Assembly: GCF_000315625.1 (NCBI RefSeq)
Contig: NW_005434541.1
Location: 90,401-154,400, forward strand
From: Guillardia theta CCMP2712
Lineage: Eukaryota; Protista; Cryptophyta
Direction: 5' to 3'
DNA: 64,000 bases
Below are positions 11,394-19,200 of the stretch, piece after piece. Below the pieces are notes generated by a model. It made no database searches. It was not told the origin of the DNA and saw nothing but the letters and a program-made list of their open reading frames with translations. The first letter of the stretch is position 1. Each line of letters starts with the position of its first letter. Made by a program: the position numbers and the translations under genes.

Positions 11394-14300
11394 ATGGGCG
11401 CGAAGAAGTGCGTTCTTGTGCTACAAGATGGAACGAGATGGGAGGGAGAAGCGTTCGGCGCGGAGGTCAGCGTTACAGGAGAAGCTGTCTTCCAAACAGG
11501 AATGGTCGGATATCCTGAGGCCCTGACGGACCCTTCCTACTGCAAGCAGATCCTAGTCATTACATACCCTCTTGTAGGAAACTATGGCGTTCCAGGAGAT
11601 GACAAAGATGAACTGGGCATTCTCAAATATTTCGAGTCGAACAAGATTCACATTGCTGCGCTAGTGGTAAGTCGAAGAAAATTCCATTCACCGCAGAGGC
11701 CTGACGTAGCCTTCAGGTTTCTACTCTGAGCGAGGACTACAGTCACTGGCGAGCAAAGAAATCTTTGTCAGACTGGCTGAAGGAGCAGGGGATCCCAGGC
11801 ATCTCAGGGGTTGATACCAGAGCGCTGACCAAGACTCTGCGTGAGCATGGCTGTTGCTTGGGAAAGCTGGTCATGGATGGAGATAACGAGAACCAGATCC
11901 AGTTCGCAGACCCCAATAAGCTGAATCTGGTTGCCGAGGTCTCTTGCAAGCAGCCGCAAGTCTACAATGCTGGAGCAGCAGTCAAGGTCACCATGGTGGA
12001 CTGCGGAATGAAGCTGAACCAGCTCCGCTGTCTCTGCGCGCGAGGAGCGGAGGTCACTGTAGTCCCCTGGGACTATGACTTCGTGAGCAACGCTAGCTGG
12101 GATGGTCTCTTCATCAGCAACGGGCCTGGTGACCCAGAGATGGCGAGCGTGACCGTCTCGAACATCAAGAAGGTGCTGGAGGGCATGAGGACAGGAAAGA
12201 TGCCGGTGAAGCCTTTGTTTGGAATCTGTCTTGGCCACCAGCTCCTGTCCCTCTCTGCAGGGGCTACGACGTACAAGCTTCCTTACGGGAATCGCGGACA
12301 CAACCAGCCCTGCATCCAGGTGGGGACGAAACATTGCTTCATTACTTCCCAGAACCACGGGTTCGCTGTTGATGAGAGCAAGATGCCTGAGGGTTGGCTG
12401 CCTCTGTTCCGCAATGCCAACGACAACACCAATGAGGGAATCGTCCACGAGAGCATGCCCTTCTTTTCTGTGCAGTTTCATCCTGAAGCTAGAGCTGGAC
12501 CCGAGGACACGGAGGGATTGTTCGATGTTTTTGTGAACGCCGCCAAGACTTACAAATCTGGAAACACTGTGGATATGCGCAAGAGCATCACTCAGAAGTG
12601 TACGGAGATAATTGGGAAGGATAGCAGCACAGTGGTGCTCCATCCCAAGCCTAGGAAAGTTCTTGTGTTGGGCTCGGGAGGGTTGTCCATTGGTCAGGCT
12701 GGAGAGTTTGACTACTCTGGCTCTCAAGCGATCAAAGCGCTGCGCGAAGAAGGAGTACAGACAGTTCTGATTAATCCAAATGTCGCTACAGTGCAGACGG
12801 CCAAGGGATTGGCAGACAAAGTTTACTTCCTACCGGTGACTCCAGACTACGTGATCCAGGTCCTGAAGCACGAGAGGCCCGACGGCCTGCTGCTGTCGTT
12901 CGGAGGCCAGACTGCCCTCAACTGTGGGATTGCTCTCTATCGCAAAGGCGTTTTGGAGCAGTACGGCTGCCGAGTTCTCGGAACTCCCGTGGAAACAATC
13001 ATCTCGACTGAAGATCGACAGATCTTCTCCGACAAGCTTGCAGAGATCAATGAAAGAATCGCTCCAAGCTTCTCCGCTGACTCGCCGCAGGAAGCAGAAA
13101 AAGCAGCTCTCAAACTTGGTTTCCCTGTCATTGTACGAGCGGCATATGCTCTTGGTGGTCTTGGCTCTGGATTTGCCTACGACATGGGCCAGCTCAAGAG
13201 TTTGGTCGCCGTCTCCTTCTCGCACTCGCCGCAGGTTCTTGTGGAGAAGTCTCTGCGTGGCTGGAAGGAGATCGAGTACGAGGTCGTTCGTGACGCCTGG
13301 GGGAACTGTATCACTGTCTGCAACATGGAGAATTTCGACCCTCTCGGCATCCACACCGGCGAGTCGATCGTCGTAGCTCCCTCACAGACGTTGGACAACC
13401 ACGACTACAACATGCTGCGCAACACTGCTGTCAAGGTCGTGCGGCACCTCGGGGTGGTTGGAGAGTGCAACATCCAGTATGCGCTAGACCCTCACTCCAA
13501 CGACTACTTCATCATCGAAGTCAATGCCCGTCTCTCTCGCTCCTCAGCGTTGGCCTCCAAGGCAACTGGCTACCCGCTGGCGTACGTGGCTGCCAAGCTC
13601 GCGCTGAACTACCCTCTTCCCGACCTGAGAAACTCAGTGACGGGGAAAACGACTGCCTGCTTCGAGCCTTCTCTTGATTACTTGGTCGTCAAGATCCCCA
13701 GATGGGACCTCAAGAAATTCTCCAAAGTGTCGAACAAGATTGGCAGCCAGATGAAGTCTGTCGGAGAGGTGATGGCGATTGGAAGGAGGTTCGAGGAGGC
13801 GATCCAGAAGGGGTTGAGAATGGTCGACTCCAACGATGGCTTTGTTAGCGATATCATCCCGGCGTCCGAGGACGAGATCCGGGACGCCACAGACCAGCGC
13901 ATCTTCTCTCTGGCAACGGCGATCGAGGAGGGCTGGAGCGTCGCCAAGCTCCACGAGCTCAGCAGCATTGACAACTGGTTCCTGAACCGCCTGAAAGGAA
14001 TCATCGATTACAACCACCACCTGTCTCAGTACAAGATCGAGAGTCTTCCCGCTGACGTTCTGCGCACCGCCAAGGCCCTCGGCTTCTCTGACAAGGTCAT
14101 CGCCAAGTGCACTCAGTCATCCCAGCTCGCCGTCAGGCAGCAGAGGAAGAACTTTGGCATCCTTCCCGTGGTGAAGCAGATTGATACGGTTGCCGCCGAA
14201 TACCCAGCATGCACCAACTACCTCTACCTCACCTACAACGCAAAGGAGCACGATCTCGAGCCGTCGAACCAGGCCGTGTTCGTGCTGGGCTCGGGAGTCT

Positions 14301-17300
14301 ATAGGATCGGATCTTCGGTGGAGTTTGACTGGTGCTCCGTGTGCTGCATTCGTGAGCTGCGCAAGCTCGGGCACGAGACGATCGTGCTGAACTGCAACCC
14401 GGAGACTGTGAGCACGGACTACGACGAGTCTGAGCGGCTCTTCTTCGACGAAATCTCCTTCGAGGTTGTCATGGACATCTACGACCGTGAGAACCCCCTC
14501 GGCGTCGTGCTGTCTGTGGGAGGTCAGGCCTCCAACAACATCGCCATGCAGCTGTTCCGCCAGAACGTCAAGGTGCTGGGAACTTCCCCGGAGATGATCG
14601 ACAACGCCGAGAATCGCTACAAGTTCTCGCGCATGCTTGACAAGCTGGGCATCGACCAGCCGCAGTGGAAGGAGCTGTCGGACGTGGAGAGTGCCAAGGA
14701 GTTCTGCAACAGGGTCGGCTATCCTTGCCTCGTCCGTCCCTCCTACGTCCTCAGCGGCGCCGCCATGAACGTAGCACACTCAGACTCAGACCTGGAGTCG
14801 TACCTTGGAGCTGCCGTTGCAGTGTCCAAGGAGCACCCAGTGGTGATCTCAAAGTTCATCGAGAACGCCAAGGAGATCGAGGTGGATGCCATTGCCAAGG
14901 ACGGCGTCGTCGTCGCCTGTGTGATCTCGGAGCACGTGGAGAACGCTGGTGTTCACTCCGGAGACGCAACCATCGTGTCTCCTGCTCAGGACCTGACGGA
15001 CAGGACGCTGGAGGGCATCAGGGACATCATGTTTGCAGTAGCGCAAGCTCTCTTCATCTCGGGACCCTTCAACATGCAGCTCATGGCCAAGGACGACGAG
15101 CTGAAGGTCATCGAGTGCAACGTCCGCGCCTCCCGCTCCTTCCCCTTCGTCTCCAAGGCCCTTGACCTCCCCCTCATCCCCATAGCCACCAGGATCTTCA
15201 TGGGCGTCTCCGAGGGAGTCCCGACGACGCTGGCGGTCGGTCAGGCCAACTGGGTGGGTGTAAAGGTGGCTCAGTTCTCCTTCAACCGCCTCCCCGGCAG
15301 CGATCCCCAGGTGGGCGTTGACATGATGAGCACAGGAGAGGTAGCGTGCTTCGGTGAGGACAGGAACGAGGCGTACCTCAAGGCGCTCCTCTCCACGGGC
15401 TTCAAGGCTCCCCCAGCCTCCAAACCCATCCTCCTCTCGATCGGCACCTACAGGAACAAGATGGACTTCCTGCCCTCCGTGCGGCTGCTGGTCGAGCTGG
15501 GATACAAGCTCTTCGGCAGCAAGGGGACAGCTGACTTCTACCTCGAAAACAACCTCGAGATCACTCCCGTCGATCTCCCCACCGATAGTGAGGGAGGTTC
15601 CCAGCTCAACCTCAAGGAGAGCCAGTTCGGCCTCGTCATCAACATCCCAGCCAAGAGCAGGTTCCGCCGTCCAGCCTCCTACAACTCCCAGGGCTACCTC
15701 ACCCGCACCATGGCTGTCCTCCACTCTGTCCCGCTCATCACGGACATCAAGTGCGCCAAGATCTTCGTCGAGGCCATCTTCAAGTACGGCCTCTGCCCCC
15801 CCGTCCGCCCCATCGTCGACTGCCGCACTGCCAACCGCACAGTCTCGCTCCCTGGCCTCATCGACATGCACGTGCATGTTCGCGACCCTGGCGCCACCCA
15901 CAAGGAGGACTGGGCGTCTTGCACGGCCTCGGCAGTCGCTGGCGGCGTCACCATCGTCTGCGCGATGCCTAACACAACCCCAGCTACCGTTGACAACGCG
16001 ACCATGCAGACGGTGAGGAACCGGGCGGCGACCATGGCCAGGTGCGACTTCGCTTTGCTGGCGGGGGCGACCATGCTCAACGCTCAGAGCGTGAAGACCA
16101 TCGACGGGGCTGTCGGGCTGTGTATGGAGTTGGACTACGCGACGAGCCACGAGTTGAGGATCGAGGACCTGACAGTCTGGATGGCTCACTTCGAGAACTG
16201 CCCTCCCAACATGCCCATCGTGGTTCGCGCAGAGTCCAAGACACTGGCAGCCGTGCTGATGATGGCGATGATGTACGACAGGGCGATCCACGTGTGCGCT
16301 CTCTCGCGCAGGGAGGAGATCATGGTGGTCCGCGAGGCGAAGAGGAGGGGCGCCAAGGTAACGTGCGGGGTCTGCCCGACGCATCTCTTCCTGGTGGAGG
16401 ACGACATCGAAAAGATCGGAGACAAGCTGTGCTCCATCCGACCTCGACTTGCCACCTCCCAGGATCGCCAGGCTCTTTGGGAGAACATCGACATCATCGA
16501 CGTCTTCTCCTCCCATCACGCCCCCCACACCAAGGAGGAGAAGGAGAAAGAGGCTGTTCCCGGATACCCAGGACTCGAGACCATGCTCCCGCTCCTCCTC
16601 ACCGCCGTCAACGATGGACGGCTGACTATCGAGGACCTCGTTCTCCGCCTGCACACCAACCCGCGCAAGATCTTTGGGCTCGCGGAGCAGCCGGACACGT
16701 TCGTGGAGGTGGACCTCGACAGGACTTGGGAGATCCCTGAGTCTCTTCCTCACACCAAGTGCGACTGGACGCCGTTCAAGGGACACAAGGTCCGGGGGGC
16801 TGTCTCGCGCGTCGTCATTCGTGGAGAGCTGGTCTACCTGGATGGGCAAGTGTTCTCCGATCCTGGTTCAGGCAAGGAGATGAGAGTCGAGGTGGTGCCC
16901 AGCAGCGAAGCTCTGCTGGCAAGTCAACACTCTCTGTCTCCTCTCCTCCCTGTCTCCTCTTCCCTCCTTCCAACCTCCTCCTCCTTCCCCCTTCCTCCCT
17001 TGCTCTCGCATCTCCTCACTTGCCCTCGCAGACTTCAGGCCAGCAGCGCATTGCTCGTGCTGAGGGCATCACATCGCCCAAGAGAGTCTCGCTCGTCACG
17101 CCAGCTGCCACCCGGCAGCTTCCTGAACGATCTCCCGATGTTCACTCGGGCTCGGGAGAGTATGGCCCAACTCCAGGTTGCTCCCCCCCCGCCCCCCCTC
17201 CTCCTCCTACCCCTCGTCCTCTTCCTCGTCCTCATTGCTCATTTCCTTATCGCTCCCTCAACTTCTTCTCTCCTCTCCTCTCCTCTCCTCTCCTCTTCTC

Positions 17301-18996
17301 CTCTCTTGTCTGAGACTTTCGCAGCTTCACCAAAGGCTCCTCCATACGTCGACCGTGTGGTGGTGCCGCAGAAGCAGCAGCCCAACATCCACCCCTACAA
17401 GAGCCCCCTCCTCGCTCCCGAGAGCTCTCTCACCCAGCCCAACGCGCTGGCTGACTTCCGGGGTCACTCCATCTTGTCAGTCTCGCAGTTCACCCGCGCG
17501 TTCATGCACCAGCTCTTCAACCTCGCGCATGACTTGCGCATCTTCTCGCAGCGAGGCCCCCTCGACATCCTCCGTGGCATGTCGCTCGCCAGCATCTTCT
17601 ACGAGCCCTCCACTCGCACCAGCAGCTCCTTCACCGCTGCCATGCAGAAGCTCGGGGGCACCGTCGTGGCTGTGCACGTGAGTCGCGAGTGTCGCAATGG
17701 TGTGCGCCTGACGGCTGCTGCAGGAAACGAACTCGTCGTCGGTGGTCAAGGGAGAGTCGCTCGAAGACTTCGTTCGGTACGCGGAGGAAGAAAGCGCACG
17801 GGCCTTGATGACTTTGACTTCAGCGTGATGGAACGATATTGCGATGTGGTCGTGCTGCGACATCCAGAGAAAGGGGCCGTGCAGCGAGCACACAGGTGAG
17901 GGAGGAGAGGAGGAAGGAGGAAGGAGAAGAGGAAGGGGGAAGGAGAGGGGGAAGGAGAGGAGGAAGGAGAGGAGCGAGAGGCGAGGAGGAGGAGTCTAGT
18001 GCTGGGGCGCTAACTCTGTGGCACAGCAAGATGAGGAAGCCCATCATCAACGCGGGGGATGGCACGGGCGAGCATCCGACTCAGGTGAGAGGCGATAAGC
18101 AGCGGATGATGAGGAGATGACGAGGGCGGCAGGCGCTGCTTGACATCTTCACCATCCGGGAAGAGATCGGCACCGTCAACGGGCTGAACATCGCTCTAGT
18201 GGGAGACCTCAAGCACGGGAGGACGGTGAGGTCGGCGCGGGAGCAAGTCAGCCTCGTGATGTCTTGCTGGTCTTCAGGTCCACAGCCTGGCGGAGCTCAT
18301 CACCTTGTATGATATCAAGCTGCACCTGGTGGCCCCTGAAGGTACTGTCCTCTCCAACCCCTTCCCCCCCCTCTGCCTCCCCCCCTCCCTGTCTCTCCTC
18401 GTCCATGCCTCTCCTCCTCGTGTCTGCGAAACCTGACCTGACGTATCAGGCCTTGAGATGCCTCGAGACATCGTTGAGAGGCTCAGTCAGAAAGGAGCTA
18501 AGGTGCATCAGACAGGAAGGGGGAAGAAAAGTCTGAGACAGGAGCAGGTGAAGGAGCACAGGAGCGTGGATGACGTCATCGCTGAGGCCGATGTTGTCTA
18601 CGTGACGAGGTGAGAGGAAGGAGGGAGGATCGAGGAGCGGGAGGATTGAGGAGCTGACATGCCGTTCAGAGTTCAGAAGGAGAGATTCACTGACCCGAGC
18701 GTCTATGAAAGTGTCAAGTCTGCTTACAAGGTTTCTCCTCCTACACCACCCACCACCACCACCGCCTCCTCCTCCTGCCTCTTCTCTTCTCCCTCCTCTT
18801 CGCTTGCAGCATTTTTGACGAGCAGCAGATCACCGCCAAGACGCTGGCACGAGCGAAGCCCAACATGATCTTGATGCACCCGCTCCCGCGTGTCGACGAG
18901 ATTCACGAGGAGTGCGACCTTGACCCGCGTTCCGTATACTTCCGCCAGGTGACGGCGAGCTGGACTCTCTCTCTCTCCTTCTCTTTCTCCTCGTAC

Positions 18997-19051
<55 letters not shown>

Positions 19052-19200
19052 CCTCTCTCTCTCTCTCTCTCTTCTCTTACCTCTCTCGCCCAGGCCGAGC
19101 ATGGCATGTTCCTCCGGATGGCGATACTGACAACGGTAAAGACCCTCGGCCGCTGCTCTGCTCGTCTGACTTGCTGGTTCAGATCCTGGGGAAAAGCTAG
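11394..19200 (+). CDS. CAD: CAD/URA2-type multifunctional protein: GATase-CPSase, dihydroorotase-like domain (apparently inactive), ATCase
   Basis: GATase GICLGHQ and FHPE; [27 protein letters not shown] and GVHSGDA; DHO-like [15 protein letters not shown]; ATCase [12 protein letters not shown] and HPLPR. Introns include 11667-11716, 16919-17031 (GC-AG) and 17177-17324, plus several in the ATCase part. Stop TAG ends at 19200. Confidence 0.97.

What the first reader, a model, noticed from the sequence alone, without database searches (positions are those of the whole stretch)
15838..16890. CAD dihydroorotase domain is a selectively disarmed pseudoenzyme
Seen versus human CAD (residues recalled from memory): the carbamylated Lys in GLKLY is Cys (GLCME, TGT 16121). 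The metal His in VAHAE is Arg (VVRAE, 16226), and the His in ICHVA is Ala (VCALS, 16298). The Glu in TCEVAP is Gly (16367), and the catalytic Asp in ASDHAPH is His (SSHHAPH, 16514). The HVHxR motif, CAMPNT Asn, HAPH His and PGxPGLET are retained, and the remainder aligns closely with the active enzyme. Known: fungal URA2 has an inactive but much more diverged DHO-like domain and relies on a separate URA4. Inference: an independent inactivation that keeps the substrate pocket and may create a His3 single-metal site, so it could act as a carbamoyl-aspartate/dihydroorotate sensor or an oligomerisation scaffold. It predicts a stand-alone DHOase elsewhere in the genome.
Basis: partly seen in the sequence, partly recalled or inferred. 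Interest (0 to 1): 0.82.

Follow-up and report, generated by a model that had tools for sequence, protein, structure and literature searches.

The report
Disarmed dihydroorotase domain in cryptophyte CAD
The alga Guillardia theta and its cryptophyte relatives keep a human-like dihydroorotase domain inside their large pyrimidine-synthesis protein, but its metal-binding and catalytic residues have been replaced while the rest stays tightly conserved, and a separate bacterial-type dihydroorotase gene elsewhere in the genome very probably does the chemistry.

Summary
The window is Guillardia theta nuclear DNA. It carries a single CAD gene (GATase-CPSase-DHO-ATCase).

- **Similarity to the human enzyme.** The DHO domain (window 15818-16900) matches the human CAD DHOase at E 1e-127 and about 53% identity. 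An AF2 model superposes on it at 1.0 A.
- **Replaced residues (human numbering).** Kcx1556 is Cys, His1590 is Arg, His1614 is Ala, Glu1637 is Gly and Asp1686 is His.
- **Retained residues.** His1471, His1473, Arg1475, Asn1505, Cys1613, His1642 and His1690 are kept.
- **Shared across cryptophytes.** All 13 cryptophyte-clade CADs show the same pattern, including Geminigera, Rhodomonas and Hemiselmis transcripts. All 107 animal CADs are canonical. Fungal domains, including a chytrid's, have lost all 14 positions.
- **Changes confined to the active site.** Only 10 clade-fixed differences from animals exist, and 9 lie within four residues of the five ligand positions (p = 3e-8).
- **Purifying selection.** dN/dS of the domain is 0.035-0.107, the same as the catalytic ATCase domain.
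- **Replacement enzyme.** The predicted stand-alone DHOase exists. It is an intact multi-exon type II (E. coli PyrC-like) gene on contig C185.

My reading is an independently evolved CAD-like pseudoenzyme domain kept as a scaffold. A ligand- or metal-binding role is not excluded. Activity, metal content and G. theta RNA reads were not tested. I found no paper describing it.

The parts
11394..11672 (+). CAD gene, first coding exon (start of the CPSase small-chain / GATase part)
   Evidence: tblastn of the public model P0001 (GUITHDRAFT_160213) on the window, 100% identity
11708..16891 (+). CAD gene, large exon: GATase, both CPSase halves, the MGS-like domain and the DHO-like domain
   Evidence: Pfam hits on the open frame: GATase, CPSase_L_D1/D2/D3, MGS, Amidohydro_1. 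tblastn of P0001.
15818..16900 (+). DHO-like domain (361 aa). TIM-barrel amidohydrolase fold, about 53% identical to the human CAD DHOase.
   Evidence: phmmer against the PDB, E 1e-127. AF2 model with pLDDT 94.3. VIA-align Z 58.8 and rmsd 1.0 A over 354 residues to 4c6c/6hfd.
15869..15883 (+). Retained HVHVR motif (His1471, His1473, Arg1475 equivalents)
16121..16123 (+). Cys codon in place of the carbamylated Lys1556 (Cys or Ser across cryptophytes)
16124..16165 (+). Remodelled flexible-loop region, one residue longer than in animals, with the fixed changes Y1558E and N1560D
16226..16228 (+). Arg codon in place of the metal ligand His1590 (Arg in all 13 cryptophyte sequences)
16298..16300 (+). 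Ala codon in place of the metal ligand His1614 (Ala or Ser across cryptophytes). The neighbouring Cys1613 equivalent is kept.
16367..16369 (+). Gly codon in place of Glu1637 (Gly in all cryptophyte sequences)
16514..16516 (+). His codon in place of the catalytic and metal-binding Asp1686 (His in all 13 sequences; Gln in the extra metagenome representative P0164). The His1690 equivalent four codons downstream is kept.
16892..17419 (+). DHO-ATCase linker region. The public model removes it as an intron, yet it is open in frame and holds a motif (SPKAPPY, 17327-17347) that is coding in other cryptophyte transcripts.
   Evidence: Not settled without RNA reads.
17420..19138 (+). ATCase domain exons (STRT, HPTQ and HPLPR motifs present)
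   Evidence: tblastn of P0001 and of cryptophyte transcripts. Precomputed Pfam PF00185 and PF02729 on P0001.

Best explanation
The domain is a catalytically dead dihydroorotase-like module inside a cryptophyte CAD-like protein. It arose once, before the sampled cryptophytes diverged, and independently of the fungal URA2 case. The binuclear zinc centre was taken apart residue by residue. The bridging carbamylated Lys, both Zn-beta His ligands, the Zn-gamma Glu and the Zn-alpha/general-base Asp were replaced. Neighbouring residues were re-tuned (Y1558E, N1560D, A1616S, C1682V, A1684S, T1685S), and I infer that Arg1590 and the new acidic residues fill the space the metals occupied. The barrel, the adjacent domain and the surfaces were preserved. 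As shown for the human and fungal domains, the module most likely serves as the dimerising spacer that joins ATCase trimers into the CAD hexamer. The conversion of carbamoyl-aspartate to dihydroorotate is carried out by a separate, intact type II (E. coli PyrC / yeast URA4 / plant-type) DHOase encoded on contig C185. Shown here: the substitutions, their conservation across the clade, purifying selection, fold retention in a model, and the presence of the second gene. Inferred: the loss of activity, the scaffold role, and that the C185 gene supplies the step.
For: - The five substitutions are confirmed against solved human structures.
- The pattern is shared by all 13 cryptophyte-clade CADs, while 107 animal CADs are canonical.
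- D1686N and K1556T each abolish human CAD function in cells (PMC7521996).
- Type II divergence is confined to the active site: 9 of 10 sites, p = 3e-8.
- Per-domain identity of DHO-like equals ATCase, at 71 vs 73% among cryptophytes and 55 vs 55% to animals.
- dN/dS of DHO-like is 0.035/0.063/0.107, against 0.034/0.065/0.086 for ATCase and about 0.2 for the linker.
- The AF2 model has pLDDT 94 and lies 1.0 A from human DHOase.
- The genome has one CAD copy and no other type I DHOase.
- An intact type II DHOase gene covers E. coli PyrC residues 8-344 and keeps HxH, Lys, His, His and Asp.
- The scaffold role of active and inactive DHO domains in CAD is described in PMC8442968.
Against: - No enzymatic, metal or oligomerisation measurement exists.
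- The constraint is as strong as on catalytic domains and far stronger than the divergence seen in fungal DHO-like domains. A pure spacer role may not explain this.
- The alpha-carboxylate-binding triad (Arg1475, Asn1505, His1690), the HxH pair, Cys1613 and His1642 are all retained, and the replacement residues Arg, Gly and His are themselves conserved. This hints at a residual or new pocket function.
- The spliced C185 protein was examined exon by exon only.
Confidence: 0.7

Rival explanations
1. The remodelled pocket has a new function, either alone or in addition to scaffolding. It could be a non-catalytic binding site for carbamoyl-aspartate, dihydroorotate or another carboxylate that regulates CAD or hands the intermediate to the free DHOase. 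It could instead be a new mononuclear (His1471/His1473/His1686) metal site with a different chemistry.
For: - The HxH pair, Arg1475, Asn1505 and His1690 are invariant in all cryptophyte sequences.
- The replacement residues are conserved: Arg1590 and Gly1637 in every sequence, His1686 in all but one.
- dN/dS is as low as for catalytic domains.
- A solved human K1556T mutant is titled as bound to carbamoyl-aspartate, so a disarmed pocket can still bind it (8pbe).
- An unrelated metagenomic CAD fragment, P0183, lost the same ligands and kept the same retained set.
Against: - The retained residues could be kept for folding reasons.
- Position 1556 varies (Cys or Ser) and position 1614 varies (Ala or Ser) within the clade, and one sequence has Gln at 1686.
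- The flexible loop that closes over the substrate is altered and lacks the Phe1563 equivalent.
- No coordinates were available to test the His3 geometry.
Confidence: 0.2
2. The domain is still an active dihydroorotase that works with an unconventional metal centre.
For: - Fold and pocket residues are well preserved.
- Some active DHOases replace the carbamylated Lys by an acidic residue. Glu stands at that column in several bacterial representatives. That these are active rests on my own knowledge of the M. jannaschii enzyme, not on a test here.
Against: - Five ligand or catalytic positions are lost at once, including the beta-8 Asp that is essentially universal in the superfamily.
- Single D1686N or K1556T changes already inactivate human CAD.
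- A complete separate DHOase gene is present.
Confidence: 0.05
3. It is an artefact, a decaying pseudogene, or the same ancient inactivation as in fungi.
For: Only one genome assembly was read here, and no G. theta RNA reads could be laid on it.
Against: - The same substitutions occur in 12 other sequences, including MMETSP transcripts of three genera.
- The frame is open and dN/dS is 0.04-0.1.
- Fungal sequences, including the chytrid Blyttiomyces, form their own clade on a stem of 1.16, have lost all 14 positions and share none of the replacement residues. The cryptophyte clade has a stem of 0.22.
- Animals, the sisters of fungi, are active.
Confidence: 0.03

Closest known systems
Fungal CAD-like protein (S. 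cerevisiae URA2; Chaetomium thermophilum DHO-like domain, PDB 5nnl) with a separate URA4 DHOase
   Same: A GATase-CPSase-DHO-like-ATCase polypeptide whose middle domain cannot catalyse the reaction. The step is supplied by a free type II DHOase. The domain is thought to be kept for dimerisation and hexamer assembly (PMC8442968).
   Different: The fungal domain has lost every metal and substrate residue, including HxH, and is far more diverged (5nnl E 1e-54 against human 1e-127; stem 1.16 against 0.22). The cryptophyte domain keeps 9 of 14 key positions. It is 53-57% identical to animal enzymes and differs from them almost only at the metal centre.
Human/animal CAD dihydroorotase domain (PDB 4c6c and others)
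   Same: Same position in the polypeptide and same fold (rmsd 1.0 A in a model). It has the same adjacent domain, HxH, the Arg/Asn/His carboxylate triad, Cys1613 and His1642.
   Different: It lacks Kcx1556, His1590, His1614, Glu1637 and Asp1686. The flexible loop is one residue longer and has no Phe1563 equivalent.
Bacterial inactive PyrC' (Pseudomonas aeruginosa type) bound to ATCase
   Same: A non-catalytic DHOase homologue retained as a structural partner of ATCase, while another DHOase does the reaction (PMC8442968).
   Different: PyrC' is a separate polypeptide of a different DHOase lineage, not a domain of a CAD fusion.
E. coli PyrC / yeast URA4 / plant DHOase (type II), relevant to the C185 gene
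   Same: The C185 gene matches TIGR00856 exon by exon and E. coli PyrC residues 8-344 at about 43-62% identity in most exons. All metal ligands are present.
   Different: It is split into about 11 exons. The joined protein was not searched or scored against the family cut-off.

Membership tests
CAD / CAD-like multifunctional protein | One polypeptide with the order GATase, CPSase (two ATP-grasp halves), DHO or DHO-like, linker, ATCase | tested here: met
   Pfam on the open frame. ATCase exons downstream. Precomputed Pfam list of P0001.
Active dihydroorotase (amidohydrolase superfamily, binuclear Zn) | HxH on strand 1 | tested here: met
   HVHVR at 15869-15883
Active dihydroorotase (amidohydrolase superfamily, binuclear Zn) | Bridging carbamylated Lys (or an acidic substitute) | tested here: not met
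   Cys at 16121; Cys or Ser in all cryptophytes
Active dihydroorotase (amidohydrolase superfamily, binuclear Zn) | The two Zn-beta histidines (His1590, His1614) | tested here: not met
   Arg at 16226 and Ala at 16298
Active dihydroorotase (amidohydrolase superfamily, binuclear Zn) | Strand-8 Asp (metal ligand and general base) | tested here: not met
   His at 16514. D1686N inactivates human CAD.
Active dihydroorotase (amidohydrolase superfamily, binuclear Zn) | Measured DHOase activity and zinc content | not testable with these tools
   Needs protein expression and assay
Inactive DHO-like domain of a CAD-like protein (fungal kind) | Lies between CPSase and ATCase and lacks the catalytic metal centre | tested here: met
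Inactive DHO-like domain of a CAD-like protein (fungal kind) | A separate active DHOase is encoded elsewhere in the genome | tested here: met
   Type II DHOase gene at G000:C185, about 74800-77300, minus strand, with all ligands present
Inactive DHO-like domain of a CAD-like protein (fungal kind) | Common descent with the fungal DHO-like clade | tested here: not met
   Separate starred clades, different residue patterns, and none of the replacement residues shared. The relation among the CAD-type clades is otherwise unresolved.
Inactive DHO-like domain of a CAD-like protein (fungal kind) | Forms the DHO-type dimer that builds CAD hexamers | not testable with these tools
   Only a monomer model was obtained. 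Needs SEC-MALS, a crystal structure or cryo-EM.

The most novel reading that the evidence does not exclude
The cryptophyte DHO-like domain is not merely a spacer. It would be a repurposed pocket that still binds carbamoyl-aspartate/dihydroorotate, or a single metal at a His1471/His1473/His1686 site, and uses this to regulate CAD or to pass the intermediate to the free type II DHOase. That would make it an enzyme turned into a sensor within its own pathway. The same retained and lost sets recur independently in at least one other unidentified eukaryotic lineage (P0183).
Probability: 0.2. Interest if true: 0.75.

Novelty: new variant of a known kind. Interest (0 to 1): 0.55.

Why it matters
CAD's DHO domain has two jobs, catalysis and holding the 1.5-MDa hexamer together, and they are hard to separate in the human enzyme. 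Cryptophytes offer a natural separation-of-function version. The domain is about 53-57% identical to animal DHO domains (about 53% to the human one). Its differences from the animal enzyme are almost confined to the metal centre, and it has been kept under selection as strong as on the catalytic ATCase domain across the sampled cryptophyte genera.

It is also a second, independent case of one evolutionary route: gain or keep a free type II DHOase, then disarm the fused one. The intermediate state is much better preserved than in fungi. The case also extends CAD-like proteins beyond fungi, whereas the 2021 review I read lists only fungi and calls protist enzymes mostly monofunctional. In practice, public annotations name these proteins as carbamoyl-phosphate synthase, CAD or 'dihydroorotase' without flagging the dead domain. 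Metabolic reconstructions for cryptophytes should assign the DHOase step to the C185-type gene.

Tried and rejected
- **Literature.** Searches for Guillardia or cryptophyte together with dihydroorotase, CAD or pyrimidine biosynthesis found nothing relevant.
- **His3-site geometry.** This could not be tested because structure prediction gives no coordinates.
- **Naming neighbours.** Cluster look-ups gave no names for P0183, the P0168-P0173 clade or the P0232/P0264/P0294 clade. The deep placement of cryptophyte CAD among CAD-type clades is unresolved in the DHO-only tree.
- **A second CAD or a type I DHOase.** I considered that one might hide elsewhere in the genome and rejected it. Other Amidohydro_1 hits exist, but none matched the pyrC models.
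- **Joined model of the C185 DHOase.** It was deliberately not built or searched. The gene was examined exon by exon only.
- **Earlier scan notes.** Notes on this genome contained nothing on this domain.

Full report
**What is there.** The window is nuclear DNA of the cryptophyte alga Guillardia theta CCMP2712. The 2113-residue public protein GUITHDRAFT_160213 (P0001) matches the window at 100% identity, and the genome handle is 87 Mb in 669 contigs.

The finding lies inside one very long exon (about 11708-16891, plus strand) of a CAD gene. Pfam finds GATase, both CPSase halves, the oligomerisation and MGS-like domains, and a weak Amidohydro_1 hit. ATCase exons follow at 17420-19138.

**The observation.** Translated in frame, window 15818-16900 gives a 361-residue domain. 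It matches solved human CAD dihydroorotase chains at E about 1e-127 over their whole length. Chain index plus 1453 gives human numbering.

- GLKLY becomes GLCME. Kcx1556 is Cys (TGT 16121).
- VAHAE becomes VVRAE. His1590 is Arg (16226).
- ICHVA becomes VCALS. His1614 is Ala (16298).
- TCEVAP becomes TCGVCP. Glu1637 is Gly (16367).
- ASDHAPH becomes SSHHAPH. Asp1686 is His (16514).

I checked each codon on the raw sequence. His1471, His1473, Arg1475, Asn1505, Cys1613, His1642 and His1690 are kept.

**Is it real and more than chance?** A word search with the DHO region returned 120 full-length CADs. Thirteen form the closest group at 64-78% identity. Cluster look-ups name Geminigera cryophila, Rhodomonas abbreviata and Hemiselmis andersenii MMETSP transcripts among them. 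The rest come from metagenomes and metatranscriptomes.

- All 13 carry Arg1590, Gly1637, His1686, Cys or Ser at 1556, and Ala or Ser at 1614.
- All 107 animal sequences carry the canonical residues.
- An exhaustive representative search added one more cryptophyte-clade fragment with Gln at 1686 (P0164).
- The fungal-type domains, including the chytrid Blyttiomyces (P0230), have lost all 14 key positions, HxH included.

The substitutions are therefore old, heritable and transcribed in relatives. They are not an assembly error.

**Selectivity.** I looked for positions at least 90% fixed in cryptophytes and at least 90% fixed to a different residue in animals. Only 10 of 361 qualify: Y1558E, N1560D, H1590R, A1616S, E1637G, C1682V, A1684S, T1685S, D1686H and D1808E. 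Nine lie within four residues of the five ligand positions (hypergeometric p = 3e-8). With the ligand positions themselves excluded, it is 6 of 7 (p = 9e-6). The divergence from the active enzyme is essentially confined to the metal centre and the base of the flexible loop.

**Constraint.**

| Measure | DHO-like | ATCase | Other |
|---|---|---|---|
| Identity, G. theta vs other cryptophytes | 71% | 73% | GATase 75% |
| Identity, G. theta vs animals | 55% | 55% | |
| dN/dS, Nei-Gojobori, three cryptophyte pairs | 0.035 / 0.063 / 0.107 | 0.034 / 0.065 / 0.086 | CPSase 0.049 / 0.054 / 0.073; linker 0.19-0.21 |

An AF2 model built on a 30-sequence alignment has mean pLDDT 94.3. It superposes on human DHOase at 1.0 A over 354 residues, Z 58.8. 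In a DHO-domain tree, cryptophytes form one starred clade on a short stem (0.22). The fungal DHO-like clade sits on a stem of 1.16. The domain is not decaying. It is maintained as tightly as its catalytic neighbours.

**Is it inactive?** This is inferred, not measured. The residues lost are:

- the bridging carbamylated lysine;
- both Zn-beta histidines;
- the Zn-gamma glutamate;
- the strand-8 aspartate, which is both a Zn-alpha ligand and the general base.

These role assignments come from my own knowledge of the human structure papers and from the review PMC8442968. In human CAD, D1686N is used as the standard DHO-dead control, and the patient variant K1556T fails to rescue CAD-knockout cells (PMC7521996). 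A domain carrying changes at both positions plus three more ligand positions is very unlikely to be a dihydroorotase.

**The predicted second enzyme.** Searching the whole genome with the NCBIfam model for dimeric (type II) PyrC gave four exon-sized hits on contig C185. The type I model hit only the CAD gene, and the domain itself has no paralogue.

On the fetched stretch (L007) the motifs HLHVR, IMPNLVPP, VKWYPAGATTNS, LLCHG, EHITT and GTDSAPH are all present on the minus strand. E. coli PyrC, taken from the annotated K-12 record, aligns over residues 8-344 in about 11 exons, most at 43-62% identity.

**How it most likely works.** The free C185 enzyme performs step 3 of the pathway. The CAD-embedded domain is retained for the structural role documented for both the active human and the inactive Chaetomium domains. 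In those proteins, lateral dimerisation links two ATCase trimers into the hexamer (PMC8442968). I put this at about 0.7.

A bare spacer role does not easily explain several features:

- selection as strong as on catalytic domains;
- conservation of the replacement residues themselves;
- retention of HxH, Cys1613 and His1642;
- retention of the Arg1475/Asn1505/His1690 triad, which binds the substrate carboxylate (role from my own knowledge).

A PDB entry titled as the human K1556T mutant bound to carbamoyl-aspartate (8pbe, listed) shows that a disarmed pocket can still bind ligand. A residual binding or regulatory function, or a single-metal His3 site, therefore stays open at about 0.2. A still-active enzyme (0.05) and an artefact or shared origin with fungi (0.03) are unlikely.

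**Comparison with the known.** This is functionally the arrangement known in fungi since URA2: a CAD-like protein plus URA4. Bacterial PyrC' is a further analogue. It is not a member of the fungal DHO-like lineage:

- it forms a separate clade;
- it has a different substitution pattern;
- it is far less diverged (5nnl E 1e-54 against human chains at 1e-127).

The review I read states that fungi have CAD-like proteins and that protist enzymes are mostly monofunctional. Seven further literature searches found no mention of a cryptophyte CAD or its dead domain. The held library lacks many subscription papers, so prior mention elsewhere cannot be excluded.

**Limits.**

Expression and the exact codons in G. 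theta RNA are supported only indirectly, by orthologous transcripts.
- No coordinates were available to test metal-site geometry.
- The DHO-only tree does not resolve how cryptophyte, animal, fungal and other CAD-type clades relate.
- The lineage of the second partly disarmed sequence, P0183, is unknown.

Noticed in passing
window 16892-17419 (conserved motif at 17327-17347): The public G. theta model (P0001, 2113 aa) splices out the whole DHO-ATCase linker, leaving almost none. Other cryptophyte transcripts have linkers of about 110 aa. A motif of theirs (SPKAPxY) is encoded in frame inside the supposed intron, and the frame stays open throughout. The annotated intron is probably too large, or absent.
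   Followed up: partly
P0183 (ENA metagenome contig of 4262 nt; residues 736-1032): A CAD fragment from an unidentified eukaryote, about 50% identical to the G. theta domain on a long unresolved branch. It is also partly disarmed (Val, Gln, Met, Gln, Ala and Ala at positions 1556, 1590, 1613, 1614, 1637 and 1686). It keeps the same retained set (HxH, Arg1475, Asn1505, His1642, His1690). This may be a third independent inactivation.
   Followed up: partly
G000:C185, about 74800-77300, minus strand (L007 2812-5334): Stand-alone type II DHOase gene split into about 11 short exons separated by low-complexity, repeat-rich introns. The first coding exon starts only about 9 residues before the HxH motif, so no long targeting extension is visible. 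A cytosolic location is inferred, not tested.
   Followed up: partly
(DHO-domain tree): After other cryptophytes, the cryptophyte CAD DHO-like domain is closest to sponge and other animal CADs (55-57%). It falls in one clade with animal and fungal CAD domains. Three other full-length CAD-like representatives (P0232, P0264, P0294; unnamed) sit apart, nearer to bacterial DHOases. This bears on the old use of the CAD fusion as a marker for unikonts.
   Followed up: no
G000:C4:784978-786087, C27:717623-718771, C38:272446-273374, C3:525585-526569: Several other Amidohydro_1 genes in the genome, some with long intron-free frames. None matched the pyrC models. Their identities were not determined.
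   Followed up: no
L011 (ENA contig NODE_591789, a Geminigera-like cryptophyte): In this relative the whole 2247-residue CAD is one uninterrupted frame on a 13.7-kb genomic or metatranscriptomic contig. G. theta has at least six introns in its gene.
   Followed up: no
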